From Mustelus asterias (Eukaryota), in assembly GCF_964213995.1 (NCBI RefSeq), contig NC_135808.1, positions 20,522,001 to 20,586,000 on the forward strand: a stretch of DNA of 64,000 bases. Reading direction: 5' to 3'. Shown here piece after piece: positions 37,056 to 64,000 of the stretch (its first letter is position 1; every line of letters begins with the position of its first letter). A program made the translations under genes and the position numbers. Under the pieces are notes generated by a model. It did no database searches, was not told where the DNA came from, and saw only the letters and a list, made by a program, of their open reading frames with translations.

Positions 37056-37093
37056 ACCGGAGCTACAATTCAGGTACCCACCCCCCTGCTGAA

Positions 37094-43500: not shown

Positions 43501-43943
43501 GCATCCTGGGATACTAAGGGGCAATTTTAGCATGGCCAATCAACCTATCCCGCACATCTTGGGACTGTGGGAGGAAACTGGAGCACCCGGATAAAGTCCT
43601 GGCAGACACGGGGAGAATGTACAAACTCCACACAGACAGTGACCCAAGCCGGGAATTGAACCCAGGTCATGGAGCTGTGAGGCAGCAATGCTATCCACTG
43701 TGCCACCGTGCCTCACTACAGGAGGCATTTAATGGGAAGGTGGATACCAACGTTGGGATAACTGAGTATGGGCTTATTAAGATAGATTCAGATGAGGAAA
43801 GATGAGCAAGTTTCTAATGGAGTATTAACATTGGCATAGAGTGACAGGACCGCATGTCATCCGATGTAAAAAAATAAAATTACACCGGAACTGATAAAAT
43901 GAAAATCTGATGTGAAGTCAGGTTTTCTTGTGGGCCTCTAGGT

Positions 43944-44027
43944 TTAACATTGAAAATTGGTTTCCAGATCTTCATTTGCACATCCATCGACCTCTGCAGC
44001 TGACGGCTCAGAATCTGCTCCATTTCC
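43944..44027 (-). CDS. Gene C terminal coding exon GNGADSEPSAAEVDGCANEDLETNFQC*
   Basis: Acceptor ttaatctccgcag (44029-44028), phase 0, TAA ending at 43944. Confidence 0.6.
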   Translation of the reverse strand, partial: GNGADSEPSAAEVDGCANEDLETNFQC

Positions 44028-45567
44028 CTGCGGAGATTAAGTAGATAAAGCCATGTAGTACACTCAAGTCAGGTAAACAGTCCAGCATGAATACTGGTAA
44101 AAAGTCCTCACTCAAATGCCTTTCTGTAACTTCCAAGGTCAACACATCAAGAAGCTTATTTGAATTGCAAACTGGTCAAATATTATTTCTATGTTTTAAA
44201 CACAGTGAGACAGCCTGATCTGCCGAGTAACCTATGGAGAGCCCTATTTTACATGACTGCACTTTCTTGAAGCTTCCCTCTCAGTAGTTTAGGATAGTCC
44301 AACAGACATCTCAGGGAGCCACAGGGTGCAAATTGCGGAATTGTTTGCTATGTTTACCCGCGTCAAATTTAGTTGGTGTGGTGATATTAATTAGGGAAAG
44401 TTTGAATCATAGAATCCTACAGTGCAGGAGTACTTTGGCCAATCGAGCCTGAAGCGACAACAATCCCACCCAGGCTCTTACGCCATAAACCCATATATTT
44501 ACCCTACTGATCGCCCGGGCACTGCTCTGACACTAAGGGGCAATTTTGCATGGCCAATCCACCTAACCTGCACATGTTTGGAGTGTGGGAGGAAACTGGA
44601 GCGCCCGGAGGAAATCCACGCAGACACAGGGAGAACGTGTAGACTCCACACAGTCACCCAAGGTGGGAATTCATCCCGGGTTCTTGGCGCTGAGAGGCAG
44701 CAATGCTAACCCCTGTGCCACCATGCATATATTTTTTTAAACTACATTTTGATGAGACTCTATGAATGCTGTCTTGTGACGCAATGCTCGGGTTCCTCCA
44801 TCTAGACCAGAAGTTCTGCGTTCAAGTTCCCCCCTCAGGAATTGATGGTCATGGTTGATTAGCAGCCAGTAAATCCTTCCAATAAGCCTGATGGCAAGCA
44901 GTAAAGAGCAGGAGGGTTTACTGGTCAGCAGTACAGCAGAAGGTAACAGTAAACCACTATGGTGCATTGCCAAACATCATCGAAGAGCAATCCAAAGAAA
45001 GTCCATGTGTAATGACTTTAATCAGGCAATTAAGGTTGGCCTGTTAGAATATGAACTCCCTGATTAAGGGTCAGATTGATGGGCCAATCAGCGAGTTGCA
45101 TGCTTTGTACATAACCAGGCGTGTCAGTTCCTCTGGGACTCCGAGTGCAAACTCCACACAGACAGTGACCCAAGCCGGGAATCGAATGCAGGTCCTTTGC
45201 ACTGTGAGACAGCAGTGCTAACCACTGTGCCGCCCCATGTTAAATGTTGCAATTGTACTTGCCTCTCTCACCTCCTCACATGGCCAGCATGCGATTGATG
45301 GTGAGCTCTCTTGACTTGACTTCATTCAGCTTTTCACCTTAATTCACTTTTAGCAATATCTCTCAGTTTCCTGTACAATAATTTAATTCACTCCCAAATA
45401 AATCCGGTCGTACCCTTTACCAGAATTCCCAGCTACTGCTAACTGCTCTGTGTAGAAACACCGACTGTCAATTAGATGCGAATCTTTAACTTTGATTAGT
45501 TTGCATTAATTAACTTAAATATCAGTTTGGTTTATATAAAGGCAGGGCACCGCTATCGCTCCCTTAC

Positions 45568-45608
45568 CTGATTCACTGAGATGTCTTCAGGAAGCGGACC
45601 ACGTTTCG
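45568..45608 (-). CDS. Gene C cytoplasmic exon (A)KRGPLPEDISVNQ
   Basis: Acceptor attcacag, donor CAG|gtaagg. 41 nt, phase 1-0. Confidence 0.68.
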
Positions 45609-47904
45609 CTGTGAATTGAATCAAAGGGAAATGCATGTCAATGGCATCATATCTCAATCCTGCAAAGGACGTCTGAGAATATTGGGCGGCACAGTCGTTA
45701 GCACCGCTGCCTCACAGCGCCAGAGACGGGGGTTCGATTCCGGCCTCGGGTCACTGTCCATCTGGAGTTTGCACATTCTCTTCGTGTCTGCCTGGGTTTC
45801 CTCCGGGTGCTCCGGTTTCCTCCCACAGTCCCAAGATGTGCGGGTGAGGTAGATTGGCCATGATAAATTGACCCTAGTATCAGGGATTCGCAGGGTAAAT
45901 ATGTGGGGTTACAGGAATAGGGCCTGGGTGGGTTGGGGCCGGTGCAGACTCGATGGGCCGAATGGCCTCCTTCTGTAATGTAGGCATTCTATTATTTGTT
46001 TCATACACTTATTGCTTTAACCTAGCCTGAAAATAAAGTGTGCATTTTAAATAATATGCCAGGAGTTTCTCTCCTGGTCATTTACTGTTAACTTGTTCAT
46101 CGAAGTTTGCCTGTCGTGTTGCAGGGAAACAGATGGTGAGTGGGATTAATTGGATGGATCTTTCAAAGAACCCTCACTGGCATAGTGTGCTGAATGAGCT
46201 CCTTCTGTGCAGTGTCCCTCTCTGATAGTAGCAAGATCATGAGAGCAGAAGTGTCTCCGTTTCCCCTCCAAGATAGGTGTGACTATTTAGGCATATGTTG
46301 CCGGAATAGCAATCCAGTTTAATGCTCCAGGGACATGGGTTCAAATCCCAATTTGGAAACTGATGTCATTTAAATTCAATTAATTAACTCTGAACATCTA
46401 ACATCGGAGAATAATTACTGTGCAGAAGAGACTATTCGGCCTATCGAGTCTGCACTGACTCTGACAGAGCATCCCACCCAGGCCATATCCCTGAAAACCC
46501 ATGTATTAATGTTGCTAACCCCCCTAATCTGCATATCTTGGAACAGAATGAGGCAATTTAGCGTAGCTAATGTACCTACCCGACTCATTTTTGGACTGTG
46601 GGAGAAAACCGGAGCACCTGGTGGAAAAAACTGGAGCACCCGGAGGAAACCCATGGTTTCGGGGAGAATATGCAAACTCCACACACACACAGTCACCCAA
46701 AGCCGGGATTGAACCCGAGTCCCTGGTTCTGTGAGGCAGCAGTGTTAGCCACAATGCTAATCTCAGTTATGGTGACAGTGGAACAATTGTCAGCTGTAAT
46801 ACCAAACCACATGGCTCACTAATGGGGATGGGAATCTGGTGTTCTTACATGGTTTGGCCAGTACGTGAATTCAGTTCCACATCAGTAATGTGGTTGACTC
46901 TTAACTGCTCTCTGAAATGGCCAAACAAGCCATTCAATTACATGGGCAACGAAGGATGGTCAACAAATGCTGGTCTTGCCAGTGACACACACTTCCCATG
47001 AAAGAATAAATAATACACCTGGGTTATTTTCACACTGGCTGGATCAAAATCTTGATATTACTCCTCTACCACCACTTTGGGACAACCATCGTCATATAAG
47101 CTACCATTATCTTCTTACCCTCACAGAGTGACAGGGTTTGATAATACCCTGTTAATGTTATATGCATCCCGAAAATGAATTTACCAAACACAAAAAGGCA
47201 TGATATAGAATTTGCTCATTTTCTACCGGTGACGAGAAATTGCGAGGCTTCATCAAGCCCATTGTTACTTCACTGAAACTGACACCATCAGGACACTCTG
47301 CATATACAGAATAAGGCAGAAATCCAGGCATCACTGCCAGTGATTGTACACTTCTCCAGATGATGTGTTGCTCAGGATACTAAGGCTGTAATCAATTGGA
47401 AATCACTGAACTGGCAAGAACTTTCATTCCAGCCGAAAATCTCTCAGAAATGCACTCCTTGTTCAATGGAGCATGGTTAGGCTTCAACTTGCTGCTAAAC
47501 TATTTGCCAATCTGATAGAACCACAAATTTCTCCATAATAAAAAGCTACATTTCTAAAACATATTTTTAAAACTGTGTTGATCTTAATTTCATTTTTTTG
47601 ACCACAATCCAATCATTAATTATTTACTTTGCTATCAGAATTATTAACCTAAAGATGGCGGGGGGGGATTCAGACATTTTACATTCCAGGATTGCCGTCT
47701 GTGAGAATACTTCAGCGTGATTGGTTGCTGACATCACTGTTAATGTATGCCTGGAGATCGCTTTGACTTAAGCACCATATGCAAAGTGATATGGGGACAC
47801 CATAGAGATCGTTACATCTGGGAAGGTTACTTCGAAGGCAGCAAAATCAGAGCTAATAACTCATATGCTAATGTCATGCAGCACAAGCTGATCCAAAGGC
47901 AAGG

Positions 47905-48110
47905 AGTCTCACAACACCAGGTTAAAGTCCAACAGGTTTATTTGGAATCATGAGCTTTCAGAGCACTGTTCCTTCATCAGGTAACTCACCTGATCAAGGA
48001 GCAGCGCTCCGAAAGCTCATGATTCCAAATGAACCTTTTGGACTTGAACCTGGTGTTGTGAGACTTCTTACTATGCCCACCCCAGTCCAACGCCAATATC
48101 TTCACATCAT
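47905..48110. mobile_element. Palindromic Penelope-derived element (inverted terminal-repeat pair); a similar one lies at ~54505-54662
   Basis: gtctcacaacaccaggttaaagtccaac…gtt-like arm mirrored by …ttggacttgaacctggtgttgtgagac, giving arms of about 78 bp. Confidence 0.75.
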
Positions 48111-48534
48111 GATCCAAAGGTGTCTTTAGGCAAACCTCCGATGAGCATTCCGTGGTGAACATTTTTATTTCAGCCTCCGGTTATTTTAAGCCTCGGAGTT
48201 AAATTGGGAACTAGAATCAAATTACAGGCCGCTTTCTGCCTCTAAACATGTGGGGAATAATGTGGGGAAACATGTCTGTGGGAAGGAAGAAGTCAATGTC
48301 TAATTTCATTGCGTTCATTAAAACTGCACGTCAACCGGTGTGTATAATAGGTGAAACTGATCGGATTGCCCAGGCTGAAATTCTGTACCAACAACAGGTT
48401 TTGAATACTTATGATCATTCAGGAGAGCAAAGTCATATTCAATCAGTGAATGTTTGCCTCAATTCAGGAGGAAAGTCAAGCATTGTAAACCACTCCGGTT
48501 ACCCAAAGAACCATCTTGTTTATGTGTTATTTAC

Positions 48535-48569
48535 CTGTTACATTAAGTTCGTCGTATCCATAATCATGC
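48535..48569 (-). CDS. Gene C cytoplasmic exon (E)HDYGYDELNVT
   Basis: Acceptor ttttttctttggcag, donor CAG|gtaaat. 35 nt; only the phase 2-1 frame is open; contains YxxL. Confidence 0.7.
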
Positions 48570-48884
48570 CTGCCAAAGAAAAAAGGGGACATTTTATGTG
48601 CTTTGAGTTAAAATGCCTATTAAGAAATACTTCTAATGTCATAGGTTCCAACAAGTTTAATATGAACAAATGAACTTTATAAACTCAATTCAAACTCAAC
48701 CTTTTCTAATAAGCTATTATTACAAATTCTGGTATGAGGCTATTAAGTATTATGAGAACAAACTCAATCATACTGTTTGAATCTGCATGTGGATAATATA
48801 CATTCCTGCATTCGTAGCCAAAGCTGACCTTATCAGTATCCCAGTGGAGGATACAAGGCTACTTTGGCGTGTATGGGACATTGC

Positions 48885-50165
48885 TGAGGCCACACCAGGA
48901 ACATTGCGTGCAGTTTTGGTGTCCTTATCTGAGGAAGGATGTCCTTGCTCTAGAGGGAGTGCAGTGAAGGTTCACCAAGCTGATTCCTGGGATGGCAGGT
49001 CTGTCATATGAGGAGAGACTATGTCGGTTAGGATTATATTCATTGGAGTTTAGAAAAGTGGGAGGGGATGCCATAGAAAATTATAAAATCCTAACAGGAT
49101 TAGACATGGTAGATTCAGAAAGAATGATCCCGATAGTGGGGAATTCCAGAACTAGGTGTCATAATTTGAGATTAAGGAGTAAATCTTTTCGGACTGAGGT
49201 GAGGAGAAATTTCTTCACAAGGAGAATGGTGAATCTGCGGAATTCACTACCACAGAATGTAGTTGAGGCCAAAATGTGATGTGATTTGAAGAAGAAATTA
49301 GATATAGCCCTTGGGGCTAAAGGGATTATGGGGAGAAGGCGGGATCAGGGTATTGAATTTGAGGACCAGCCATGATCAGGCTCGAAGGGCCGAATGGCCT
49401 ACTCCTAGTTTCTATGATGTTTCTTCCTGTCTATCTATGCCCCTCATAATTTTATACATCTCAATCATGTCCCCCTTGAGTCTCCTCTGCTTCAAGGAAA
49501 TAACCCCAGTCTATCCAATCTTTCTTCATAACTAAAACACTCCAACCCAGGCAACATCTTGGTAAATCTCCTTTGCACCCTTTCAAGTGCTATCACATTC
49601 CTTCGATAATGTGCATTCCAGAACTGCACGCAATACTCTCGCTGTGACTAACACTTTATGCAGCTCCAGCATAACCTCCCTGTTCTTAAACAGTATGCCT
49701 TGACTAATAAAGGCAAATATACCATTTACCTTCTTAACTACTTTATCCATCTGTCCTGCTACCTTAAGGGACCATGTACATGCACACCAATGTCCTCAGT
49801 GCTTCCCAGGTTCCTGTTGTTCATCGTGTATTCTCTTATCTTGTTTGTCCTCACCTCACACTTATCCAGCTTGAATTCCATTTGCCGCTACTCAAGCCAT
49901 CTGACCAGCCCATCTATATCCTCCTATAATCTAAGGCTATCCTCCTCACTATTTACCATTCTTGTCAATTTCTATCCCCATGCCATATCATCCCCAACCT
50001 TACAGATCAACCCTCCTTTATATAAACCACAACAAGCAAGGGCCTCAACACTGATCCCTGCGGGACCCCATTGGACATAATCTTCCAGTACAAAAAACAC
50101 CTCGTGACCATCACCTTCTGCTTCCTGCCACTCAATCCATTCTAGATCCAATTTGCCAAATTCGA
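48885..50165. mobile_element. Two abutting CR1 fragments in opposite orientation (+ ~48885-49420, - ~49430-50165)
   Basis: GLSYEERLCRLGLYSLE and RNFFTRRMVNL on +; decayed RT on -. Confidence 0.8.
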
Positions 50166-51249
50166 TGAATTCCTGAAGCGAGAGGGGACACAGCAATAAC
50201 TGAAGTTGTTGAGCCAGTTATGTTGCATTGACTTCAAGGGGGGTCGGGGTTGGGGGGAGGGGGGGGGGGGGCGGTGGGGAACGGTGAGGTTAAAGGGCTA
50301 ATTGGATTCCACTTGTTTCTTCTGAATTGGTCCAATTGACTCTTCTACCAGGACAGATGAACAGGACGAAGATGAGGACATCTGGCTGGTGTGTTTTGTC
50401 ACAACCAATGACGGGTCGAAATCATTGCCAGATGAATGTCATCACACTTTTCTTTATTTTTGCTTCTGACAAAAGTCAGACTGCTAGACATGAGCAATCT
50501 GAGCCGGCAATGGCCTAGTGGTATTATCGCTAGATTATTAATCCAGAAACTGAGCTAATATTCTGCGGACCCAGGTTCGAATCCCACCACAGCAGATGGT
50601 GGATCTGAATTCAAGTTTTAAAAAAAATCAATCTGTAATTAAGAATCTACGGATGACGATGAAACCATTGTTGAATGTCGGAGAAATCCTTCTGGTTCAC
50701 TAAAGACCTTTAGGGATGGAAATCTGACATCCTTACTCAGTCTGGCCGGTTTGTTTTCACTGGAATGATGGAGGTTGAGGGGCGACCTGATAGACGTCTA
50801 CAAGATTATGAGGGGCATGGATAGTCAGAAGCTTTTCCCAGAGTGGAAAAGTCAATTACTAGGGGGCACAGGTTTAAGGTGCGAGGGGCAAGGCTTAAAG
50901 GAGATGTACGAGGCAAGTTTTTTTTAATACTGAGTGTGGTGGGTGCCTGTAACTCGCTGCCAGGAGAGCTGGTGGAAGCAGGTATGATACTGACTTTTAA
51001 GGGGCATCTTGTCAAATACATGTTTTTAGTTCAGTCGGGCAGCATGGTCGGTGCAGGCTTGGAGGGCTGAAGGGCCTGTTCCTGTGCTGTAATTTTCTTG
51101 TTGTTTGTTTGTTCTTACATGTGACTCAAGATCCACAGCAATGTGGTTGACTCGCAACCGCCCTCCAAGGGCAACTAGGGATGGGCAATGAATGCTGGCC
51201 AGCCAGTGACACCCATGTCCCACGAATGAATTTTAAAAAATAAACTAAC

Positions 51250-51276
51250 TCCTGTACATCATTTCCTCTCCACAAC
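51250..51276 (-). CDS. Gene C cytoplasmic micro-exon (E)LWRGNDVQ
   Basis: Acceptor taatttctgtgacag, donor GA|gttagt. 27 nt, phase 2-2, so it is symmetric and skippable. Confidence 0.5.
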
Positions 51277-51531
51277 CTGTCACAGAAATTAAAAATGCCG
51301 CACGTGCTTGGATAACCGCCATTACAGAAAACGCGGTATTTTGACAGAAAGTGCGTTTCAAGCAGATTTTCTCAAATTGTACATAAAAGGAGCTTAACTC
51401 CTTAAATGTATTTGTAAGTGTGTTGCAGTTCTGGGGAATAAAGATTTCTTTCTTGCCTTTGGGAAGACATGAGGAACTGAAAAAAGGCAAATTCGAAAAT
51501 GTGACAGGTTGGGTAAAGAGAATTGACTCAC

Positions 51532-51629
51532 TCTGAATCGTTACGTCCCACAATCACATTCAGAGAAGATACTTGTTGTAAAAGATCCATCTTTATCGTG
51601 GCGTATTGTACAGGCTCTGGTGCAGTAGT
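51532..51629 (-). CDS. Gene C cytoplasmic exon TTAPEPVQYATIKMDLLQQVSSLNVIVGRNDS, containing an ITIM consensus
   Basis: Acceptor ctttctgtttatacag, donor GA|gtgagt. 98 nt, phase 0-2. VQYATI fits (I/V/L/S)xYxx(L/V/I). Confidence 0.7.
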
Positions 51630-52656
51630 CTGTATAAACAGAAAGATTCGCTTAGTCGAGATTGGCCAGCCAAGATGCATGCTTCAGGAACCCCGTTGGG
51701 GAGGGTTTTTGATGAGTTGATATTTGTGCACGAGATCCGTCATTTTAAATTGAGATTAAGAATGTGAGACTTGAATAAAACAAATAAGTAGAATGCGCAA
51801 TCAAACTCTAAAGTATTGCTGAACTCACACAAGATCGGGCTACGTTTTTGCAGAGACGCTGAAGGATATGAGGAGTCTGATCTGTTATAAATAAAATGTC
51901 CTTCTTGCGCTTTGTACCCGTTAACAACATCTCATAGTCATAAAAGCACGTATGTTGAAATGTTTCATTCCTATCAATCAGCATAGTTAATTATTAAAAT
52001 GTCTATCTCTAAAATATACCCATCTACCATCGAATCCCTACAGTGCAGAAGGAGGCCATTTAGCCCATCGAGCCTGCACCGACCACAATCCCACCCAGAC
52101 CCTATCCCCGAAACATCACACATTTACCCTGCTAATCTCCCAATTTCGCATGGCCAATCAACCTAATCCGAACATCTTTGGACTGTGGAAGAAAACCAGA
52201 GCACCCGGAGGAAACCCACACAGACACGGGGAGAATGTGCAAACTCCACACAGACAGTGACCCGAGGCTGGAATTGAACCCAGGTCCCTGACATTGTGAG
52301 GTAGCAGTGCTAGCCACTGTGACACCGTGCCACCCCAAATTGTGCTCTGTTCATAAATTCATAAGGTATAGGAGCAGAATTAGGCCATTCAGCCCATTGA
52401 GTCTACACCGCCATTCGATCATGGCTGATATGCTCCTCATCCCCACTTTCCTGCCTTCTCCCCATCAACCCATTACCAATTAAAAATCTGTCTAACTCCT
52501 TAAATTTACTCACTATCCCAGGATCCACCGCACTTTGGGGTAGCGAATTCCAGATTCACAACCCTTTGGTAGAACTAGTTTCTCCTCAACTCTGAGCGTT
52601 TTGCCTCAAATTGCATTGAAACTCGATATCATAATTCACTTTATGTTGTTGCTTAC

Positions 52657-52691
52657 CTCAGTCTGTGATACGAGCGGACAACTTTGGTCAT
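52657..52691 (-). CDS. Gene C cytoplasmic exon (D)DQSCPLVSQTE
   Basis: Acceptor ttttgaacttgtag, donor GAG|gtaagc. 35 nt, phase 1-0. Confidence 0.65.
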
Positions 52692-55600
52692 CTACAAGTT
52701 CAAAATGTAACGGATAGGAAAATGTCAGTGGAGTTTAATACAATAAGGTGTAGCACAATATTCAGAGCGATAGATTGATGTTTGATGTCAGATAATTCGA
52801 TAGATAGAAAAACATTTATTTGAGCTACATTTCAGCCGTTTAATGACAGAACAGAGGAGTGGAATGGACTGTTTTTGTCTCTGTTTCTATAATGTCTAAT
52901 CGTGCCTCTCAGTGTCTCCTATATTATACTAATAGGGTTAATAAACTTGAATGAATTATTAGTAAGAATGATAAAACAACCCGGTTCCAGAAAAAAATCA
53001 GATAAGTTACCAATTTGTCAAAACTGTATATTTGTGTACGTGGGTGTGTTTCATTCAATGGCTCCAGACAGGGTGCTGACATAACTAACCCCTTGCTATT
53101 TTATCAAGAACTCATGCAGTTCATCTGGACAAGCAGACATGGCTGGGGAATTTGGCAATGTGGTGCTCCCCCGTCACTGCAGCAAAGCACAATTATCTAA
53201 TGAACTTTCAAAGTAGGACTCCGCATTGTTTCACTTTGGAAACAAGAGCATCAACAGTCGAGTCGAAGGGACACAAGACAGACAGACACCTATTTCTACA
53301 AAGTCCGACTGAGATTCACTAGAAACCAGCAATTGCTGGATTACATTTTGAAAGCTTAAGGGTGAACATCATAGAATCCCTGCAGTGCAGAAGGAGGCCA
53401 TCTGGCCCATCGAGTGGGCAGTGACTCGCACAGCATCATACCCAGGCCCTATCCCCATAACCCCTCATACTTACCTGGCTACTCACCCTAACCTATGCAT
53501 CTTAGGACACTAAGGGGCAATTTACCATGGCCAGTCATCAACCTAACTTGTTCATCTTTGGATTGTGGGAAACCGGAGTACCTGGAGGAAGCCCACGCAG
53601 ACATGAGGACACAGACAGTGACCCGAGGCTGGAATTGAACCCGGGTCCCTGGCACTGTGAGGCAGCAGTGCTAACCACTGTGAAATCAAATAGCAAGTGC
53701 AGCAGTCTAATACACTCATAATTAGCGTTCACCGGTGATCAAGCTACATCTATTAAATTGTCACAAGCCTCTGGAGGCAGCATTCACCAGAAACTACACA
53801 TAAAGACAGATAAGATTTTTATAACTCTGGAACAACTGTATGCTCGGGATAAATAAGGATGCTTCTGTCATTTGCATCCAGTGTCAGAAGTAATATGGGC
53901 CTAATGTAGATCTGCAGCAAACATCTGCAGGTGGCACGGTGCCACAATGTTTAGCACTGCTGCCTCACAGCGTCAGGGATCCACGTTTGATTCCCAGCTT
54001 GGGTTACTGTCTGTGTGGAGTTTGCACATTCTCCCCGTGTCTGCTTGGGTTTCCTCCGGGTGCTCCGGTTTCCCCCCACAGTCCAACGATGTGTGGGTTA
54101 GGTTGATTGGCCAATGCTAAATTGACCGGAGTCGGGGATTAGCAGGGCAAATGAGTGTTATGGGAATAGGGCCTGGGTGGGATTATGGTCAGTACAGACT
54201 CAATGGGCCGAATGGCCTCCTTTTGTACGATAGGGATTCTATGATCGTCATTGTAACAGTGCCATTTCTCAGAATTGATATTTCCTCAGAGGAAAAGTGG
54301 GGTGGGGGGGGGGGGGGGGGGGGGCTTATAAAAATGTTGCCAGGGCTAAATAAAGTGTAGCTTTGAGGAGAATTGGATAGGTTTGCGTTATTTTCCTTGG
54401 AACAAAGAAGGCTGAGGAGTGATTTGATAGAGGTGTATAAAGTTATGAGGGGTAGAGACAGAGTGGACAGAATATTTTTTTTCCCTTGGCAAAGAATTCT
54501 AGAGTAAGAAGTTTAACAACACCAGGTTACAGTCCAACGGGTTTATTTGGTAACAAAAGCAAAAGCGTGTGGCTTTTGCTCCCAAATAAACCTGTTGGAC
54601 TTTAACCTGGTGTGGTTAAACTTCTTACTGTGTTTACCCCAGTCCAATGCCGGCATTTCCACATAAAGAATTCTAGAACCAGGGGACATGGATTCAAGAT
54701 AAGTGGCAGTAGGTGCAGAGGGGACATGAGGAAGAACTTTTTATGCAGAGGGTGGTGGGTGTCTGGAATTTGCTGCCCAAGTTGGGGGTGGAGGCAGAGA
54801 CCCTAAAGACTTTGAAAAAGTACATGGATCTGCACCTTAAGTGCTGTAAGATACAGGATTATGGGCAGGGTGCGGGATGGTGGGATTGGAAAGAGAATCA
54901 GAGTGTCTGCAGGCTGGCATGGACAAAATGGGCCGAATGGTCTCCTTCTGTACTGTAACTGTTCTATGTTTCTATGGAAATTGCCGATGTCAAAGTTGTT
55001 ACTGAGTAATTTCCTGCTGTGGGCCAGACACATTAGAGATTGAATTGAGGGCCCTTCAAACTACTTTCACATTTAGACTGGGCAATGGGGAGAATCTCGC
55101 CTCATCTCCCTGCGCCTGACTTAAATCAAGACAGCAGATACAAGTGGCATCATAAGTTCCCTTCTATTCTCTCTCAGGACAGCTACACTTTACTGTTCAC
55201 TGTAACTCAATGAGTGACTTTCTCTAATCGCCGTGTTTGAACCTTTTGGCGCCCAGCCTCACTTCAGCCCAAAATCCAGACTGGGGAGAGTGCTGCACTG
55301 CGCATGGTTGGAGATGTCATCTTTCAGCTGACCATGATTGTTGTAAAAGAACTCTTGGACCTATTCCGAAACAGCAACATAGAAACAAGAAACATAGAAA
55401 ATAAGAAGAGGCCCTTCGAGCCTGCTCCACAATTCATTTTGATCATGGCCGATGATGAAATTCAAGATCCTGATCCTGCTTTCCCCCGGTATTCTTTGAT
55501 CCCTTCAGCTTCAAGAGCTGTATCTAATTTTTTCTCATTGTTAGTGTAGTGATGAGTATCCCTGCTTGTCACACGGTCCACCGGGGTTCAATTTCTTTAT

Positions 55601-56883
55601 CGCAATTTTAAGATGACAACATTTTTGGGGTGGCACGGTGGTTGGCACAGCTGCTTCACAGCGCCAGGGACCCAGGTTCAATTGTGGCCTTGGGTCACTG
55701 TCTGTGCAGAGTCTGCACATTCTCCCTGTGTCTGAGTGGGTTTCCTGCGGGTGCTCTGGTTTCCTCCCAGAGTCCAAAGAAGTGCGGGTTAGGTTTATTG
55801 TCCATGCTCAATTGAACCTAGTGTCAGGGGGATTAGCAGGGTAAATATGTGGGGTTATGGGAATAGGGGCTGGGTGGGATTGTGGTCAGTGCATGGCTTC
55901 CTTCTGTACTGCAGGGATCTATGATTCTCGAAATCACGCAAAGTTTTGGTCTCAACTACTTTCTCTGGGAGTGCATTCCACAAATTTACCACTCTCTGGG
56001 TGAAGAAATTTCTCCTCACCTCAGTTCTAAAAGGTTTACCCCTCATCCTCAAACTTGACCCCTCATTCTGGACTCCCCCACCATTGGGAACATTCTTTCT
56101 GAATCTACCCTGTCCAATCCTGTTAGAATCTTTCTAAGTTTCTATGAAGTCCCCTCACTCTTCTAAACACCAACACGGTGGCACAGTGGTTAGCACTGCA
56201 GCCTCACTGCGCCAGGGTCCCAGGTTCAATTCCAGCCTCAGGTTACTGTCTGTGTGGTGTTTACACGTCCTCCCCGTGTCTGCATGGGTTTCCTCCGAGT
56301 TCTCCAGTTCCCTCCCACAGTCCAAAGATGTATGGGTCAGGTTGATTGGCCATGCCAAATTGCCCCTTAGTGTCAGGGAGATAGCAGGGTAAATGTGTGC
56401 GGTTATGGGAACAGGGCCTGTTGGTACAGATTCGATGGGCCGAATGGCCTTCTTCTGTACTCTAGGGATTCTATAATTACTGACCTAGTCTCTCCTCATG
56501 TGAACAGCAGAGTTTGCAACCAAAATCACCAAATTATATCACTATCACGTTGCTTTTGATGGGACCATGCACAAATTAGTGTTGCTTAGCTGTGTCAACG
56601 TTTACACTGTAACAGGTTTTCCTCGGCTGCAAAGCACTCTTTGGCCTCCTATGGTTATGTGAGGCACCAGATTGATGTATTTTGCTGACACTGGAGCAGA
56701 ACCTTATCATAACACTGATACTTGAGAACTTATTAAAAAATACCTATTTCCAAATGGTCTCCCGCCAGCTGATAATAAATAGAAATCCTCGCATACAAAA
56801 TGCATACTTGTAATACTTCCAATGAACACAATCTGTCACTAGCCGTGTCAAATATTTAAATTCATTCTTATTGAGTTACTTGC

Positions 56884-56951
56884 CAATCAGGTTATCTGTC
56901 GAACTGCTGAATGTCTTCAGATTGTCAGGAGGGGGAGGAGGAAATAAAGTC
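56884..56951 (-). CDS. Gene C cytoplasmic exon (R)TLFPPPPPDNLKTFSSSTDNLI
   Basis: Acceptor tgtttataacacag, non-canonical donor TG|gcaagt. 68 nt, phase 2-1, which is exactly what the flanking exons require. Confidence 0.58.
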
Positions 56952-58952
56952 CTGTGTTATAAACAGAGCAAGAAAAAACAATTGTTAAAGTTCATTTATT
57001 CGTGTCACAGTCGGACTTGCTTAGTGGTTAAAAACTGGGCAGCATGGACAAGTTGAGCCGAAGGGCCGCTTTCCATGCTGTAAACCTCTCTAACTCTATG
57101 TGCGGAATTTTACTGGGACATCTGCTGGAGGTTCGTACGACACTGTCCGAGGCCAATGGAGAGTGCCGGTCTCCGAACCTCGCCTGCCCCCGGAATCGGG
57201 GCGGCCATGCCGGTAAAATTCCGGTGTATAAGTAGGTTTACATTCACACTGTAATGAATTTAATGTGAAAATTATATTTGTTTTCTACATTTTCTTGTAC
57301 AGCTGGGTTGACAGTGGAGTGAACACTCGAAATCTAGGATGGTAGATGTGCCAGGGAATCTAGATACCCATTCCTGAGGCCTAATCAACAGCAACCCCAT
57401 CCGCCCCCACTAAATCAGAAGGACCATAGGGTGATCACAGAGAATGCTGGCGAGGCCAATACCACAGGAGTCCCATCCACTCGACCTACTGGAGGAGGGG
57501 CGACCATGTCTAGATAAAAAAAAGGTACCTTGCCCACTCTTGTCCAATGACACCACTCTTCCTGGCAAAACTGAATGGCCTCCTTCTGTGCCATAATAAC
57601 TATTCTATAATTCTATTGAGCACAGATGATGGACGATTCGAAACATTCACTAACTACATCTGATCAGTTTTGTCTCGTTATTCTGTTGACCAGGAAGCGA
57701 GTTTACTGACTCAACCTTACAAGTCCCTCTATGTTTGTCACTCCCTCTGGCACACCGATATCCGCACCTTTAGGGTGTTCGAGTTACATCCAAATCTGTC
57801 CACAGACACATGACGCATGCAGTGTTACTGTCCCGTTCGGTTGTGCTGTTACCCCGGCAGTATGTCAGAAGGATAGAAACTCAGTGTCATATTTTTGTAT
57901 CATGATGCTTCTGTGAACAACGCTGGGATTTTTATTACATTTAAGGCAATGCACAAATACAAGCTGTTGTTGTAGCACAAATTTAGGCGTCTCCGACAAG
58001 GACCAGATCCTGCCTTAATTGAGTCTCATTAGGTTTCTCAGAGCAGCTCGGGATTCATAAGCGTATGAGAAGTCGAATATACTGGTACTTTCATCTTGAC
58101 GAGAAAGAGTTTTTGCACTGGGGCTGACGCAAAATCACAAGTATCAACTCCTGTCACCTCCGGATTTGAATCCACAGCACGAAAACCAAGTGAGATAGCC
58201 ACCCTTAAATTGTTGTGATAGAATGGCCTCTGGATGTTATGTTATGCGGCACGGTGGCACAGTGGTTAGCAATGCTGCCTCACAGCGCCAGGGACCCGGG
58301 TTCGATTTGTGTGGAATTTGCACAGTCTCCCCGTGTCTGTGTGGGTTTCCTCCGGGTGCTCCGGTTTCCTCCCACACTCCAAAGATGTGCAGGTTAAGTG
58401 GATTGGCAATGCTAAATTGCCCCTCAGTGTCAGGAGGACTAGCTAGGGTAAATGCATTGGGTTATGGGGAGAGGCCCTGGGTCGGACTGTAGCGCAGACT
58501 CGATGGGCCGAATGGCCTACTTCTGCATTGTAGGATTCTATGGCGCTTTCTTGCATCTATACCCGCTGGAGCACCCAACGAGATGTAATGTGGTGTGACA
58601 GGGAGCCCTGCTTGTGTCTTCTGAGCCCGAAGATCAGTTGCTAGGGAGATGCGCGGAAGGCCACATACTCGCTCAATACTACCCAAAACAATAAGGACAT
58701 TGCAGTGTAACTGGTTTCTGCTCACTGCAAAATGCACTGTGGAATATCAAAAAACCCGAGCAAACATGGCCATCATTCACAAATAAGCCATTATCTTTGT
58801 CCCAATTGAAAGCCAAAACATACCTCCACTGGCAAACAGTGGAAATGATATGGTTTAGTCTTGTTTCGATGTAGTTACACATGCTCCCAGCACCTTCCAA
58901 TACCAAGCTGGCATTACCACTCCTGAGAGTTATAAAGTCATAGAGATATAGA

Positions 58953-59255
58953 AGGCAGCACATTGGCACAGCGGTTAGCACTGCTGACTCACAGCACCAG
59001 GGAATTGGGTTCAATTCCCGGCTTGGGTCACTGTCTGTGCAGAGTCTGCACGTTCTCCCCATGTCCGCGTTTCCTCGGGTACTCCAGTTTCCTCCCACAA
59101 TCCGAAAGACGTGCTGATTAGGTGCATTGGCCATGCTAAATTCTCCCTCAGTTTACCCGAACAGGAGTGCGGCGACTCGGGGATTTTCACAGTAACTTCA
59201 TTGCAGTGTTGATGTAAGCCCACTTGTGACACCAGTAAATAAATAAACTTTTAAA
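58953..59255 (+). mobile_element. HE1-like SINE variant with an alternative 3' tail
   Basis: Same head and V core, but the tail is …ggggattttcacagtaacttcattgcagtgtt.atgtaagcc.acttgtgac..aataaa. Also at ~8860-9215, 9315-9590, 38598-38888 and 42495-42677. Confidence 0.75.
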
Positions 59256-59422
59256 CTATACAGCACGGAAACAGGGAATTATCCCTCTCAACCTTTCCTA
59301 ACTATGTACTTGTCCAAATTTAAATGTTGTAATTGTACTGCCATATTTAATGGCAGTACACTGAATTTACAGTGATAGCAGCAAGCTAACTGTAAATGTA
59401 ACAGGTTTCTGGCTAAATGTAC

Positions 59423-59463
59423 CTTTCCATGGGCGTGTAGATCGATTGATCTTGGTTTGTATC
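59423..59463 (-). CDS. Gene C cytoplasmic exon DTNQDQSIYTPME
   Basis: Acceptor tttatttgtttcccccag, donor AAG|gtacat. 41 nt, phase 0-2; contains YxxM. Confidence 0.68.
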
Positions 59464-62400
59464 CTGGGGGAAACAAATAAAGCTTTATCAGTGAATATTC
59501 GAATGAAGTGTAATACAATCACACGCAAAGTGAAACATATTTCGGGACTATACGCAAGGGATCATGTTCAAGTAGATTTCCATCTTTAACTTGTCATAAA
59601 GTCAAATATTTATCCAAGGAGATAATTATTTATATAGACCAACACATTCTAATATATTAAAGGAAGAATTCCCCGATGACCTACCACGGGATAAATCATA
59701 ACACACACCCACACACACTCTGTCTATATTTCCCACTGCCTCAGAAAAGCAGCCAGCATAATTAAGGACCCCACACACCTCGGACATTCTCTCTTCCACC
59801 TTCTTCCGTCGGGAAAAAGATACGAAAGTCTGGTGTCACGTACCAACCGACTCAAGAACAGCTTCTTCCCTGCTGCTGTCAGACTTTTGAATGGACCGAC
59901 CTCGCATTAAGTTGATCTTTCTCTGCACCCTAGCTATGACTGTAACACTACATTCTGCACTCTCTCGTTTCCTTCTCTATGAACGGTATGTTTTGTCTGT
60001 ATAGCACGCAAGAAACTATACTTTTCACTGTAGGCTAATACATGTGACAATAATAAATCAAATCTCTCTCACACACCCATTTAGATGCAAACACACATAT
60101 ACTCTCAGATATATGCACAATAGCATTGTACAGTGTGTTATTGGCAGCTATCTTCAGATTGCTTTAAAAAAAAGCACTTGAAGAGTCATCCAGACTCGAA
60201 ACGTTGGCTCTGTTCTCTCTCCACAGATGCTGTCAGACCTGCTGAGATTTTCCAGCATTTTTTGTTTTTGTTTGTGGCACCGAAACGGTGTTGGATGGCT
60301 GAGTCCCGAACATAACTTTATTAAAATGTGACATCAGAGAAATTAATCTCACTATCTTTAACTTGTTACTAAATGACAGGAAATGAAGCAAATGTTCCTA
60401 TTATGTTTAACACTTTATGACACATAGTGAAAAAATCCCTTTGGCACCAATGTTCACATTCACCAAATATCCAACAGATTGGGACTACAGGAGTCTCCTC
60501 ACCATGCTGACATCACCAACACACTCGCACCAGATGAACCAATCTCACTATGTTGACAATTTCCTGTTACATGCAGAAATTTAATTCGACGGTGACTATT
60601 AATTCCTGCATATGACTGAAAACAGCAGAAATGTCAAGATAGCAGACTTTGGGATGTATGATTTAATTAATATGGATCAATGAAAAATAACATGTTCAGT
60701 TGTTCCTGACTGCGGATTTAACACTCACTAAAGCAGGAGCGCTAATACCAGCTTGCTATTGCAAGGTGCTGGGAGTTCTTGTAACTACATCTAAACAAGA
60801 CTAAATCATATCCTTTCCACCGTTTGCCAGTGGGGTCTGTTATGGATATAATGGCTTTTTTTATATTAAACTAAAAAGAGTGCAGAAAAGATTTATTAGG
60901 ATGCTACCGAGTCTTAATGGTTTGAGTCATAAGGAGAGGCTGGATAGACTGGGACTCTTTTCACTGGAGCATAGAAGACTTAGGGGTGATCTTATAGAGG
61001 TCTATAAAATAATGAGAGGCATAGGTCAACTAGATAGTCAACATCTTTTCCCAAAAGTAGGGGAATCTAAAACTAGAGGGCATAGATTTAAGGTGAGAGG
61101 GGAGAGATACAAAAGGGTCCAGAGGGGCAATTTTTTCACACAGAGGATGGTGGGTGTCAGGAACAAGCTGCCAGAGATAGTAGTAGAGGTGGGTACAATT
61201 TTGCCTTTTAAAAAGCGTTTAGACAGTTACATGGGTAAGATGGGTAGAGAGGGATATGGGCCAAATGCGGGCAATTGGGACTAGCTTAGTGGTTTAAAAA
61301 AGGGCGGCATGGACATGTTGGGCCGAAGGGCCTGTTTCCATGGTAAACCTCTATGACTCTATTTATGAATGATGGCCGTGTTTGCTGTGGCTATTTGACA
61401 TCAGCTGAATAGATAAAAATGATAATGGCTGGATTTTGCAGATGTGGAAATGGTGTGGGTCACCACCTTGACAGCTGCCCTCAGAGTTCCTTTACATGGA
61501 CTATAAGTGTGCCGACGTCTTCTGATGTGGCTTCAGATAGAATGAGGCGTCACCTTGTGGGTGCCCTGTGTCATCTGTGAACAGGGCTGAGAACAGTGGG
61601 ACTTGTCAATCCATCAGATTGAAGACTCCTCACTGGCACACAGCGGAGTAACAATTCGTCTTGGGAAGTATAACAAAGTGGGCAATATCAGATTCCTGAT
61701 TGATGATATACTGCACCAGAATGGACGGCAATAGAACTGAATATCAGTTACTGACTATAGTGGATTTAAACAGCCATCTGCGATGGAGTTGTATCCCAGA
61801 GTGTAAACCACGATTCACAGACCATGGAGTACAAATTAGACTTAAATCCTCAACACAAAGTGAAATACGGATAGAATATTACACCTACATTTTCAAATCT
61901 GATACTCATTGTTAGCACTGCTGCCTCACAGCACCAGGGACCTGGGTTCGATTCCGGCCTCTGGTCACAGTCTGCGTGGAGTTTGCACGTGCTCCCCATG
62001 TTTGTGTGGGTTTCCTCTGGGTGCTCCGGTTTCCCCCCATACTCCAAAAATGTGCGGATTAGGTTGATTGGCCATGATAAATTGCCCCTCAGTGACAGGG
62101 GGACTAGAAGGGTAAATATGTGGGATTACGGGGATGGGACCTGGGTAGGATTATTATCGGTGCAGGCTTGATGGGCCGATTGGCCTACTCTGCAGTGTAG
62201 GGATTCTATGATTCTACGAATTAGTTGCCCAGTGCTTTGGAAATATCTCAGTCGGTGCAGACTCAATGGGCCAAATGGCCTCCTTCTGCACTGTTGATTC
62301 TATGATTGAGAGAATGAGGCTTTGCACTTGCGAGATTGATTTCTTTTCTACAGCCAGATAGGTTATTGCTCATTGATTTTCATTCTGTTAATAAGTCACA

Positions 62401-62798
62401 CACGTCTATATACACCAGCTCTAATTAATTCTGGCTCCTTAGGGGGATTAGTTAGGATGTAATTCAGGTTTGAGGGGTTGTCTCCCTCTCAGTGCCAAGA
62501 GTTTGGCAAGGGCAGCACCAGCAGACTGTACAGGGGAATGGGTTATATCAGACAACAGAATCTCAGTTTTCAGAATGAACAGCAGACACCAAGCATTGTG
62601 GTAGGTTTACTGTCAGCCTCAGTTATTCTAGTCATAAAAACTGACCCATGTTCTGTATAGGTATTCGTTCTCAGTCCAATTATACCTGTGTCTAATCTGT
62701 GATTTCATAAAGGGGATAGTGTGGATTTATTGTTCCAAACCTATACTGGGTATGTGAAGTTGAAATAATGCAATTTGTTTTCTAATTAGGTTACTTAC

Positions 62799-62839
62799 CA
62801 GATCTTGCTCCATCTCATCTGGAGGTGACGTTATGTTGT
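62799..62839 (-). CDS. Gene C most 5' exon identified in the window, (x)NITSPPDEMEQDL
   Basis: Branch point and acceptor ctaacttgttttgcag, donor CTG|gtaagt. 41 nt, phase 1-0. The upstream exons are presumably beyond 64000. Confidence 0.68.
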
Positions 62840-64000
62840 CTGCAAAACAAGTTAGAAACATAAATCAATGAGGTAAATCTCCTCTGTAACTGCACATGGT
62901 GAGTCTAAGATTACACCATTTATAGTAATGGCAGTCTATGTTTGAAAAAAGCATTACAAGTATCAGTGTTGTCTATTGGAAATGTTGCTAGATATACGAT
63001 GTCTCACAACTATATCTATTGTACTGTTTAGCCAATCCAGAATACTACAGTGCAGAAGTGGCCCTTCGGCCCAGAGTCTGTACCAACCAATATGAGACCC
63101 TGACCTGCCCACCTTATCCACTTGCCAGCACTTGGCCCATGGCCTTGCATGTTATGGCGTGCCAAGTTCTCACCCAGATACTTTTTAAAGGATGCAAGGC
63201 ATGTGGATATGGATGTGAATCAGGTTTTTCTTAGTTTGTGACACTAGATGGTGTTCAGGATTGGGTCTGCATGCAATCACTGAAGCTAAAGTCACAGGAT
63301 TCTAGAGGAAGGAAAGTTTTGGGGGTCCCGGGAGGAGGGAAGTCATGGTTGTTTTCAGTCGGGGATTGGGGACTGGGCAGAGAGGCAGGGGATAGGGAGG
63401 TCAAGCAGTTACTGGAATGTAAATGGAGGGCACTCAAACTTAAAAGGGAACTTCTGATGGAGGTAATCCCCTTTCCATACGAGACCTAAACCCAATTATT
63501 TTCCAGTCTCTTCCATGTGCAGGAACTCTTCCCGCCAAAATGGTGAGAAATGACTCTCAAATGGTCAATAATTCGATTCCCGGCTTGGGTCACTGTCTGT
63601 GTGGAGTTTGCACATTCTCCCCGTGTCTGCATGGGTTTCCTCCGGGTGTTCCAGTTTCCTCCCACAGTCCAAAGATGTGCAGGTTAGATGAATTGGCCAT
63701 GCTAAATTGACCCTAGTTTCGGGGGGGATTAGCAGGGTAAATATGTAGGGTTACAGGGATAGGGCGGGATTGTTGTTGGTGCAGGCTCGAATGGTCTCCT
63801 TCTGTACTGTAGGGGTTCTATGAATAATTTGTCAGTTAAAGGCCTTAATTGTTGAAAGATCAGTCCTTGCCTATCCCACTTTTAACTGTTGGGAGGATGG
63901 GGCAGTGGGAAACCAATCGGGAGCAAGCACATCCATGCTATTTCACACTCACCTGCGTGACTTGTGACCCCCATCGTGCCTCATTTCAACTCTTAGGCAA

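What the first reader, a model, noticed from the sequence alone, without database searches (positions are those of the whole stretch)
43944..62839. Hidden gene C: nine small exons across 19 kb encode a long signalling tail
Seen in sequence: nine exons (41, 41, 68, 35, 98, 27, 35, 41 and 84 nt) sit in repeat-free islands on the minus strand, each with a pyrimidine-rich AG acceptor. Their phases chain without conflict (1-0, 0-2, 2-1, 1-0, 0-2, 2-2, 2-1, 1-0, 0-stop). The product is NITSPPDEMEQDLDTNQDQSIYTPMERTLFPPPPPDNLKTFSSSTDNLIDDQSCPLVSQTETTAPEPVQYATIKMDLLQQVSSLNVIVGRNDSELWRGNDVQEHDYGYDELNVTAKRGPLPEDISVNQGNGADSEPSAAEVDGCANEDLETNFQC*. It is not recovered by the ORF track. Inference: this is an acidic, disordered cytoplasmic tail of a leukocyte receptor or adaptor that I cannot name. 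Its ectodomain and TM would lie to the right of 64000.
Basis: partly seen in the sequence, partly recalled or inferred. Interest (0 to 1): 0.85.

Follow-up and report, generated by a model that had tools for sequence, protein, structure and literature searches.

The report
Long-tailed shark NKp30-like receptor gene
These small exons are the real 3' end of a shark NKp30-like immune receptor gene with a long, acidic, tyrosine-motif tail that other sharks also have; one of the nine proposed exons is probably not real.

Summary
All nine exons are in the sequence at the stated minus-strand coordinates, with AG acceptors, GT or GC donors and a consistent phase chain.

The decisive evidence is conservation. 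Annotated NKp30/NCR3-like proteins of Scyliorhinus canicula (XP_038671255.1), Carcharodon carcharias (XP_041068140.1) and Stegostoma tigrinum (XP_059495503.1) carry a colinear cytoplasmic tail. It matches exons 2, 3 (3' part), 5, 7, 8 and 9, with 0 of 2000 shuffles reaching the score against at least two of the three proteins. Exons 1 and 4 fit their slots only weakly.

Exon 6 has no counterpart in 3 of 3 relatives and a weak donor, so it is probably spurious. Leaving it out keeps the frame. The first 30 nt of exon 3, which encode the proline run, are not conserved and look like an exonised pyrimidine tract.

It is a long-tailed member of the shark NCR3 family, lying tail-to-tail with a short-tailed gene that has an Arg in its TM. 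It is a new member of a known kind. Another first-reader note (s1-893723, unchecked) reports a similar micro-exon tail elsewhere on this chromosome.

The parts
62799..62839 (-).
   Evidence: Acceptor ranks 12/1243 and donor gtaagt 6/1070. Conservation is weak. NITS is identical to Carcharodon P0012 in the right slot, a 13-residue stretch just before the exon 2 match, but 457/5000 shuffles reach the score. The best local alignment against the whole tails falls elsewhere.
59423..59463 (-). Exon 2 (41 nt, phase 0 to 2); DTNQDQSIYTPME, carries a YxxM motif (YTPM)
   Evidence: 0/2000 shuffles reach the score against P0014, P0012 and P0006. IY.PME is invariant in 5/5 aligned shark proteins. Acceptor ranks 2/1243. 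The Rhincodon model P0007 ends ...SIYTPMER, which places an exon border at the same point.
56884..56951 (-). Exon 3 (68 nt, phase 2 to 1, GC donor gcaagt). Only the 3' part, 56884-56921 (LKTFSSSTDNLI), is conserved. The 5' 30 nt (TLFPPPPPDN) are specific to this genome.
   Evidence: 0/2000 shuffles against all three proteins, but the alignment covers exon residues 7-22 only. In the relatives PME is followed directly by S-LKTF. In the window the dinucleotide before that point is AA, not AG, and it is preceded by a pyrimidine run. Reading on past the donor gives GK-stop, the same ending as Chiloscyllium punctatum P0003 (...NVMGK).
52657..52691 (-). Exon 4 (35 nt, phase 1 to 0); DQSCPLVSQTE
   Evidence: Fits the 12-13-residue slot between the exon 3 and exon 5 matches. 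Against P0012 (QSSPIKSQKQ) 13/5000 shuffles reach the score. It is not significant against P0014 (891/5000) or P0006 (3228/5000). Donor gtaagc ranks 7/1070; the acceptor is weak at 164/1243.
51532..51629 (-). Exon 5 (98 nt, phase 0 to 2); carries the ITIM-type motif VQYATI
   Evidence: tblastn E 4.5e-08 and 73.5% identity over 34 aligned positions to the Scyliorhinus P0014 tail; it is the top hit in the whole window. 0/2000 shuffles against all three proteins. No Pfam family.
51250..51276 (-). Probably not an exon, at most an optional cassette.
   Evidence: In 3/3 relatives the exon 5 match is followed by one or two residues and then the exon 7 match, so there is no room for it. Donor gttagt ranks 343/1070. 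Leaving it out keeps the frame, and the split codon GAG = E gives the ...DS-E-HDYGYDEL seen in P0014.
48535..48569 (-). Exon 7 (35 nt, phase 2 to 1); HDYGYDELNVT, a G-Y-x-x-L motif after acidic residues
   Evidence: 11/11 residues identical to Stegostoma P0006 and 10/11 to P0012 and P0014; 0/2000 shuffles. Best acceptor of the region, 1/1243.
45568..45608 (-). Exon 8 (41 nt, phase 1 to 0); KRGPLPEDISVNQ
   Evidence: 0/2000 shuffles against P0014 and P0012, 46/2000 against P0006. Donor gtaagg ranks 3/1070.
43944..44027 (-). Exon 9 (84 nt including the stop); acidic C-terminus
   Evidence: tblastn E 1.5e-07 and 66.7% identity over 27 residues to the C-terminus of Scyliorhinus P0014, whose end falls at the same place. 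0/2000 shuffles against P0014, 2/2000 against P0012, and no match to P0006 (1730/2000).
43728..43733 (-). First polyadenylation-like hexamer (ATTAAA) after the stop; only a candidate
   Evidence: Pattern scan. It lies about 210 nt 3' of the stop, just before a SINE-like repeat. No RNA data.

Best explanation
The stretch holds the last eight coding exons of a shark NCR3 (NKp30)-like immunoglobulin-superfamily receptor gene, transcribed right to left. The V-domain exon(s), the TM exon and at least one juxtamembrane exon lie beyond 64000. The eight micro-exons (35-98 nt) encode a long, acidic cytoplasmic tail with no recognisable domain. It carries three tyrosine motifs conserved among sharks: YTPM (YxxM type), VQYATI (ITIM type) and DYGYDELN (G-Y-x-x-L after acidic residues). 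Shown here: the exons, their phases, and their colinear conservation in annotated proteins of three shark orders. Inferred: after ligand binding by the V domain(s), Src-family kinases phosphorylate these tyrosines and SH2 proteins dock on them. By analogy with known motifs, SHP-1/2 or SHIP would dock at the ITIM, PI3K p85 at YxxM and perhaps Syk at GYxxL. The receptor would then signal through its own tail, mainly as an inhibitory or modulating partner of the neighbouring short-tailed, Arg-TM NCR3-like gene B. This differs from mammalian NKp30, which signals through CD3-zeta.
For: Exons, splice sites and phases are verified, and all exons sit in repeat-free islands. A profile search seeded with the window's own V exons found 11 shark NCR3-like proteins, three of which had tail hits on the predicted exons. 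A search with the Stegostoma tail found 5 proteins among 59 candidates. With tails alone as tblastn queries against the whole window, both strands, the six best HSPs of P0014 (of 13 with E<10) and of P0012 (of 16) all fall on predicted exons, in colinear order. For P0006, 5 of 18 HSPs do, including the best three. Per-exon Smith-Waterman scores were reached by 0/2000 shuffles for exons 2, 3, 5 and 7 against all three proteins, and for exons 8 and 9 against two of them. Truncated gene models of Rhincodon (P0007) and Chiloscyllium punctatum (P0003) end where exons 2 and 3 end. The V domain of the tail-bearing protein P0006 matches human NKp30 best among solved structures: four entries at E about 7e-12 to 1e-11, with the next family at 2e-05. 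Genes A and B in the same window have V-set exons whose nearest database proteins are shark NCR3-like. The motifs are conserved: IY.PME in 5/5 proteins; QYA and HDYGYDELN.TAKR in 3/3 proteins that reach that far.
Against: There is no transcript evidence of any kind. The relatives are computed NCBI gene models whose support I could not see. The V and TM exons of this gene are outside the window, so its link to an NCR3-like ectodomain rests on relatives and neighbours. Exons 1 and 4 are only weakly conserved. Exon 3 seems to have lost the relatives' type of acceptor and depends on an upstream AG whose use is unproven; skipping exon 3 would break the frame. A search of 1.84 billion representatives with exon 5 alone found nothing at E<=0.001, which a 32-residue query can explain. 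The tail matches no Pfam family. Every signalling step is inferred from motif resemblance.
Confidence: 0.85

Rival explanations
1. A decaying or non-functional copy: a pseudogene, or a gene whose tail is no longer made in full. It keeps most exons of the family's tail but cannot splice exon 3 correctly.
For: At the point where relatives begin exon 3, the window has AA instead of AG. Skipping exon 3 is frame-incompatible. No expression evidence exists. The 5' part of the gene was not seen.
Against: All eight conserved exons have open frames, intact AG and GT/GC borders and the stop at the same place as in Scyliorhinus. An in-frame, stop-free upstream acceptor with its own pyrimidine tract is available (rank 26/1243). 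Motif exons are 73-100% identical to relatives.
Confidence: 0.1
2. The tail belongs to some other kind of membrane protein or adaptor in this genome, for example after exon shuffling, and not to an NKp30-like receptor.
For: No V or TM exon of this gene lies in the window. The tail has no family signature of its own.
Against: In 3 of 3 full-tail relatives, and in both truncated ones, the tail follows NKp30-like V domains. The window's other two genes are NCR3-like. An unchecked first-reader note (s1-892496) places a TM helix with a Glu 9.7 kb beyond the window, and the Carcharodon and Stegostoma relatives have a Glu in their TM.
Confidence: 0.04
3. A chance chain of pseudo-exons picked out of the many AG...GT segments in 19 kb of intron-like DNA.
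For: Each length and phase class has dozens of open AG...GT/GC candidates. A crude splice matrix finds 18 candidates of similar strength on this strand and 8 on the other. This does appear to be what exon 6 is.
Against: Six exons show colinear, highly significant similarity to the tails of proteins from three shark orders. Those proteins were found through the V domains of neighbouring genes and, for two of them, through the Stegostoma protein's own tail, never through the window's tail exons.
Confidence: 0.01

Closest known systems
Scyliorhinus canicula uncharacterized protein LOC119975535 (XP_038671255.1, P0014, 387 aa)
   Same: The tail is colinear with exons 1-5 and 7-9. Identity is 79% in exon 2, 73.5% in exon 5, 10/11 in exon 7 and 67% in exon 9, and the C-terminus ends at the same place.
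   Different: It lacks the ten residues TLFPPPPPDN and the exon 6 residues. The model has two V domains and no TM segment. The window's own ectodomain is unseen.
Carcharodon carcharias LOC121291130 isoforms (XP_041068140.1, P0012, 483 aa; P0013, 580 aa) and Stegostoma tigrinum LOC132206215 (XP_059495503.1, P0006, 332 aa)
   Same: They have NKp30-like V domain(s), a TM with a Glu, and the same tail order: juxtamembrane QRQ..EI.C.DD, IYTPME, LKTF.NS, QYA(T/S)(I/L), HDYGYDELN(I/V)TAKR.
   Different: One to three V domains. The C-terminus is longer and different in Carcharodon and shorter in Stegostoma. Stegostoma and Rhincodon have an extra acidic stretch between the exon 1 and exon 2 equivalents.
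Mammalian NKp30 (NCR3)
   Same: A V domain of the same type: the relatives' V domain finds human NKp30 structures first. The window holds other genes with such V exons.
   Different: According to a review, mammalian NKp30 signals through CD3-zeta bound by TM charge interaction (passage read in PMC12272517). It has a short tail (recalled). Here the tail is over 140 residues long with its own tyrosine motifs, and the relatives' TM has Glu, Gln or His where an activating receptor would have a basic residue.
Shark NCR3 family of Kinlein et al. 2021 (Immunogenetics 73:333; nurse shark MT914154-914161)
   Same: Probably the same gene family. The title and reference were seen in reference lists, and the accession numbers in a Methods passage of PMC12227049.
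   Different: The paper is not held. I could not see whether a long-tailed subtype with these motifs is already described there. From memory, its abstract speaks of eight divergent subtypes.
ITIM-bearing inhibitory IgSF receptors and hemITAM receptors (Dectin-1, CLEC-2)
   Same: VQYATI fits the ITIM pattern (S/I/V/L)xYxx(I/V/L) (recalled consensus). DYGYDEL has a Gly next to the Tyr, acidic residues upstream and YxxL, like the DEDG-Y-x-x-L of Dectin-1 (passage read in PMC12669754).
   Different: There is no sequence homology to any of these. hemITAMs sit at the N-terminus of type II lectins and have a tri-acidic DED, which is not present here. Function is untested.

Membership tests
NCR3 / NKp30-like receptor family (shark) | Non-rearranging VJ-type V domain closest to NKp30 | not testable with these tools
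   The V exon of this gene lies outside the window. For proteins carrying the same tail the feature is met: P0006 finds four human NKp30 structures at E 7e-12 to 1e-11, with the next family at 2e-05, and V-set hits are seen in P0006, P0012 and P0014.
NCR3 / NKp30-like receptor family (shark) | Tail homologous to that of annotated family members | tested here: met
   Colinear matches of exons 2, 3, 5, 7, 8 and 9 to P0014, P0012 and P0006. The top six window-wide HSPs fall on predicted exons for two of the three queries. 0/2000 shuffles reach the scores.
NCR3 / NKp30-like receptor family (shark) | Clustered with other NCR3-like genes | tested here: met
   V exons at 1-294 and 2078-2587 (minus strand) and at 15845-16231 and 18130-18528 (plus strand) are V-set. 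They are 55-72% identical to shark proteins that the sources call NCR3-like or leave uncharacterized.
Mammalian-type activating NKp30 | Basic TM residue pairing with CD3-zeta/FcR-gamma, and a short tail without motifs | tested here: not met
   The tail has over 140 residues and three Tyr motifs. The relatives' TM has Glu (P0012, P0006), Gln (P0007) or His (P0003). The TM of this gene itself was not seen. Neighbouring gene B does have an Arg at the TM edge.
ITIM-bearing inhibitory receptors | (S/I/V/L)xYxx(I/V/L) in the cytoplasmic tail, conserved | tested here: met
   VQYATI in exon 5; VQYATI, IQYASI and VQYATL in 3/3 relatives. The consensus itself is recalled.
ITIM-bearing inhibitory receptors | Tyrosine phosphorylation and recruitment of SHP-1/SHP-2/SHIP | not testable with these tools
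   Needs biochemistry.
hemITAM receptors | Acidic stretch plus Gly directly before YxxL (DEDG-YxxL) | tested here: inconclusive
   E-H-D-Y-G-Y-D-E-L has the Gly and YxxL but not the DED triplet. Dectin-1's DEDG comes from a passage in PMC12669754. Position and topology differ.
YxxM (PI3K p85-binding) costimulatory-type motif | Y-x-x-M in the tail, conserved | tested here: met
   YTPM in exon 2; YTPM in 4/5 and YLPM in 1/5 aligned shark proteins. Binding is untested and the motif's meaning is recalled.

The most novel reading that the evidence does not exclude
Sharks keep a self-signalling form of NKp30. Its tail, built from micro-exons, combines a YxxM, an ITIM and a hemITAM-like GYxxL that is unchanged across three shark orders, and its TM has a polar or acidic residue. 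It sits tail-to-tail with an Arg-TM, short-tailed paralogue as a paired activating/inhibitory system. On this reading the ancestral NKp30 signalled through its own tail, and mammals kept only the adaptor-dependent form. In this genome, loss of the exon 3 acceptor would also have turned a pyrimidine tract into a new polyproline segment of the tail.
Probability: 0.25. Interest if true: 0.6.

Novelty: new member of a known kind. Interest (0 to 1): 0.4.

Why it matters
It shows that a gene invisible to ORF finding, with exons of 35-98 nt spread over 19 kb, can be read correctly from raw sequence. It also shows that such a reading needs a conservation check, which removed one of the nine exons and reinterpreted part of another.

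Biologically it adds a long-tailed, probably inhibitory or dual-signalling member to the shark NKp30 cluster, next to a short-tailed gene with an Arg in its TM. NKp30 is regarded as one of the few NK receptors traceable through vertebrates (recalled). A conserved self-signalling form would bear on how the receptor first worked. The invariant HDYGYDELN motif is a clear target for experiment.

Tried and rejected
RNA evidence: the look-up of sequencing runs on 42800-52799 listed only two runs of unknown kind, holding 0.68 and 0.59 of the words. That suggests genomic DNA, and none is on record as RNA.

Exon 5 alone (32 aa) against 1.84 billion representatives gave 0 hits at E<=0.001. This says little, because the query is so short.

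Exons 5 and 9 against Pfam gave 0 families.

Paralogous tail exons inside the window: per-exon tblastn gave only self-hits. The next-best hits had E>=0.016, and those were proline runs.

Most sites rank high, but the test cannot separate the chain from decoys. I rejected it as proof.

I looked for another acceptor that would give the relatives' S-LKTF start of exon 3 and found none: the dinucleotide there is AA.

I looked for the juxtamembrane exon in 62840-64000 and did not find it.

An 8-residue match (ATPYCIKL, 52754..52731) to the Carcharodon juxtamembrane segment has E about 3, is followed by a stop after one more residue, and has no TM-like text before it. I took it for chance.

Papers: Kinlein et al. 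2021 (PMC8273117) and Flajnik et al. 2012 (PMC3709836) are not held. Searches found no paper in the library that describes a long-tailed shark NKp30. Two of these required the word shark (20, 47), one the phrase 'shark NCR3 family genes' (23) and one the word cartilaginous (45). That does not show the tail is unpublished. Of PMC12227049, PMC10450919, PMC11599192, PMC12272517 and PMC12669754 I read only the outline or abstract (first one) and the passages found. I asked for no supplementary files. Those of Kinlein et al. and of PMC12227049 may hold the nurse shark NCR3 sequences that would settle novelty.

The joined nine-exon (or eight-exon) product was never built, searched or folded.

Full report
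**What is in the sequence.** I enumerated minus-strand segments of the stated lengths and phases that are bounded by AG and GT/GC and are open in frame.
- Donors are gtaagt, gtacat, gcaagt (a GC donor, exon 3), gtaagc, gtgagt, gttagt, gtaaat and gtaagg. Exon 9 ends in a stop.
- The phase chain is as claimed.
- All nine exons lie in islands of 428-775 nt that have no repeat elsewhere in the window. In 43944-62839 as a whole, 44% of positions are covered by such repeats.
- None can appear in an ORF list, and none does.
- The window is rich in SINEs and LINEs. The database proteins nearest to its V exons are all from sharks.

**Are splice signals enough?** No. With an approximate consensus matrix, recalled rather than fitted, the nine acceptors rank 12, 2, 26, 164, 41, 16, 1, 34 and 13 of 1243 AG sites. 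The eight donors rank 6, 68, 12, 7, 31, 343, 12 and 3 against 1070 GT sites. However, 18 candidate exons of comparable combined strength exist on this strand and 8 on the other. Each length and phase class has dozens of open candidates. A chain picked for compatible phases is therefore not evidence in itself.

**Conservation, reached without using the tail as bait.**
- The window holds V-set exons of two other genes: A on the minus strand (1-294, 2078-2587) and B on the plus strand (15845-16231, 18130-18528).
- One V exon of gene B found a Cetorhinus protein and a Chiloscyllium protein.
- A profile of these two plus the window's V exons (A1) found 11 shark proteins. Several are named 'natural cytotoxicity triggering receptor 3-like' by their sources.
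- I laid all 11 on the window with tblastn. Three of them (Stegostoma P0006, Rhincodon P0007, C. punctatum P0003) also hit the minus strand at predicted exons 2, 5 and 7.
- Searching with the tail of P0006 (residues 172-332) found 5 proteins among 59 candidates. These include Carcharodon LOC121291130 (P0012, P0013) and Scyliorhinus LOC119975535 (P0014) (accessions).

**Exon-by-exon test.** I used the tails alone as tblastn queries against the whole window, both strands.

| Query | HSPs with E<10 | On predicted exons | Which exons |
|---|---|---|---|
| P0014 | 13 | 6 (the six best) | 5, 9, 7, 2, 8, 3 |
| P0012 | 16 | 7 (including the six best) | 5, 7, 8, 3, 2, 9 |
| P0006 | 18 | 5 (including the best three) | 7, 2, 5, 8, 3 |

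For all three queries the hits on exons are colinear.
- Smith-Waterman scores of each exon's own translation against each tail were reached by 0 of 2000 shuffles for exons 2, 3, 5 and 7 against all three proteins. The same held for exons 8 and 9 against two of them.
- Exon 7 (HDYGYDELNVT) is 11/11 identical to Stegostoma and 10/11 to the other two.
- Exon 9 is 67% identical to the Scyliorhinus C-terminus, which ends at the same place.
- Exons 1 and 4 are short and diverged. Exon 1 shares NITS with Carcharodon in the right 13-residue slot (457/5000 shuffles). Exon 4 aligns in its slot with Carcharodon (13/5000 shuffles) but not significantly with the other two. Their splice sites and phases, and the equal slot lengths, make them likely but not proven.
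- Two truncated gene models give independent support for exon borders. Rhincodon P0007 ends ...SIYTPMER, where exon 2 ends. C. punctatum P0003 ends ...NVMGK, and reading past the window's exon 3 donor likewise gives G, K, stop.

- *Exon 6.* The 27-nt exon (LWRGNDVQ) has no counterpart. In 3 of 3 relatives the exon 5 match is followed by one or two residues and then by the exon 7 match. Its donor is the weakest of the set (rank 343/1070). Because it runs from phase 2 to phase 2, dropping it keeps the frame, and the split codon becomes GAG = E, as in Scyliorhinus ...DS-E-HDYGYDEL. I take it for a false exon, or at most a rare cassette.
- *Exon 3.* Only the last 12 residues are conserved. The first ten (TLFPPPPPDN) are absent from 3 of 3 relatives, where PME is followed by S-LKTF. 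In the DNA the proline run is a pyrimidine tract (tttcctcctccccctcct). It lies just 5' of the point where an exon of the relatives' type would begin (56921), and the dinucleotide there is AA, not AG. The simplest reading, which is an inference, is that the usual acceptor is absent in this genome. An AG 30 nt upstream, with its own pyrimidine tract (rank 26/1243), would then be used in frame, turning the old tract into a polyproline segment. Skipping exon 3 would break the frame. So the proline run should not be read as a conserved SH3-type motif.

**What the gene is.**
- The tail-bearing relatives have one to three V-set domains.
- The V domain of P0006 finds four human NKp30 structures first (E 7e-12 to 1e-11), with the next family, amphioxus IgVJ-C2, at 2e-05.
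- In Carcharodon and Stegostoma the TM carries a Glu. Rhincodon has Gln and C. punctatum His at that place.
- The Scyliorhinus model has no TM.
- Upstream of the exon 1 equivalent, the relatives have a juxtamembrane stretch (QRQ..V..EI.C.DD).
- Gene B, on the other strand, has a TM exon at about 21489-21575 with an Arg at the TM edge. Its short last exon lies near 23781-23924 and resembles Cetorhinus P0001. A short-tailed Arg-TM gene and a long-tailed gene therefore lie tail to tail.

**How it probably works (inference).** The conserved elements of the tail are IYTPME (YxxM), (V/I)QYA(T/S)(I/L) (ITIM pattern) and HDYGYDELN(I/V)TAKR. The last has a Gly next to the Tyr and acidic residues before it. 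This is reminiscent of the DEDG-YxxL of Dectin-1's hemITAM (passage in PMC12669754). The meanings of YxxM and ITIM are established knowledge that I recall; I did not test them. Mammalian NKp30 signals through CD3-zeta, bound through TM charges (passage in PMC12272517). This shark form would instead signal through its own tail, most likely as an inhibitory or modulating counterpart of Arg-TM paralogues.

**Novelty.**
- The family is known. Shark NCR3 genes were described by Kinlein et al. 2021; I saw only the reference, and the paper is not held.
- The long-tailed proteins are in public annotation as 'uncharacterized'.
- My four library searches found no paper describing this tail, but the two most relevant papers could not be read.
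- Another first-reader note (s1-893723, unchecked) reports an NKp30-like receptor with a micro-exon tail 12.9 Mb away on the same chromosome. The scan has therefore seen the kind before.
- I file it as a new member of a known kind, with moderate interest.

**Left out.** All comparisons were made exon by exon.

Noticed in passing
window 21489-21575 and about 23781-23924, plus strand: Gene B seems to have a TM exon reading ...QRIVRGLVIVTVIIAISFWRMR, with an Arg at the TM edge as in Cetorhinus P0001, and a short last coding exon (...LWKNERSR...EEFRT-stop). That is the activating-type, short-tailed layout. The phase between the two exons did not fit with the borders I tried, so a border is off or a small exon is missing.
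   Followed up: partly
window 15845-16231 and 18130-18528, plus strand: The two V exons of gene B were noted earlier (s1-894118) as interchangeable cassettes. Relatives carry two or three tandem V domains in one protein (Carcharodon P0012 two, P0013 three; Scyliorhinus P0014 two). Both exons may therefore be used together, or their number may vary by splicing.
   Followed up: partly
window 56921-56951, minus strand: The polyproline stretch of exon 3 is a pyrimidine tract in front of an AA, at the point where relatives would need an AG. This may be a case of acceptor loss with in-frame use of an upstream AG.
   Followed up: partly
window 34989-37118, minus strand: There is a stop-free stretch of 710 codons with endonuclease and reverse-transcriptase-like text, followed by a further 280-codon stretch at 34213-35052. 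It looks like a young LINE copy between genes B and C.
   Followed up: no
P0014 (Scyliorhinus XP_038671255.1): The annotated model goes from the second V domain straight into the juxtamembrane and tail sequence with no TM segment. It is either a mis-modelled gene or a soluble or alternative form.
   Followed up: no
P0006, P0012, P0007, P0003, TM segment (alignment A2): The TM of the long-tailed proteins has Glu, Glu, Gln and His at one aligned position. A polar or acidic residue is unusual for a receptor with its own signalling tail.
   Followed up: no
window 52731-52754, minus strand: ATPYCIKL resembles the Carcharodon juxtamembrane ATPYCVKL (7/8 identical, E about 3). It has no TM-like text before it and a stop one residue after it. 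Probably chance.
   Followed up: yes
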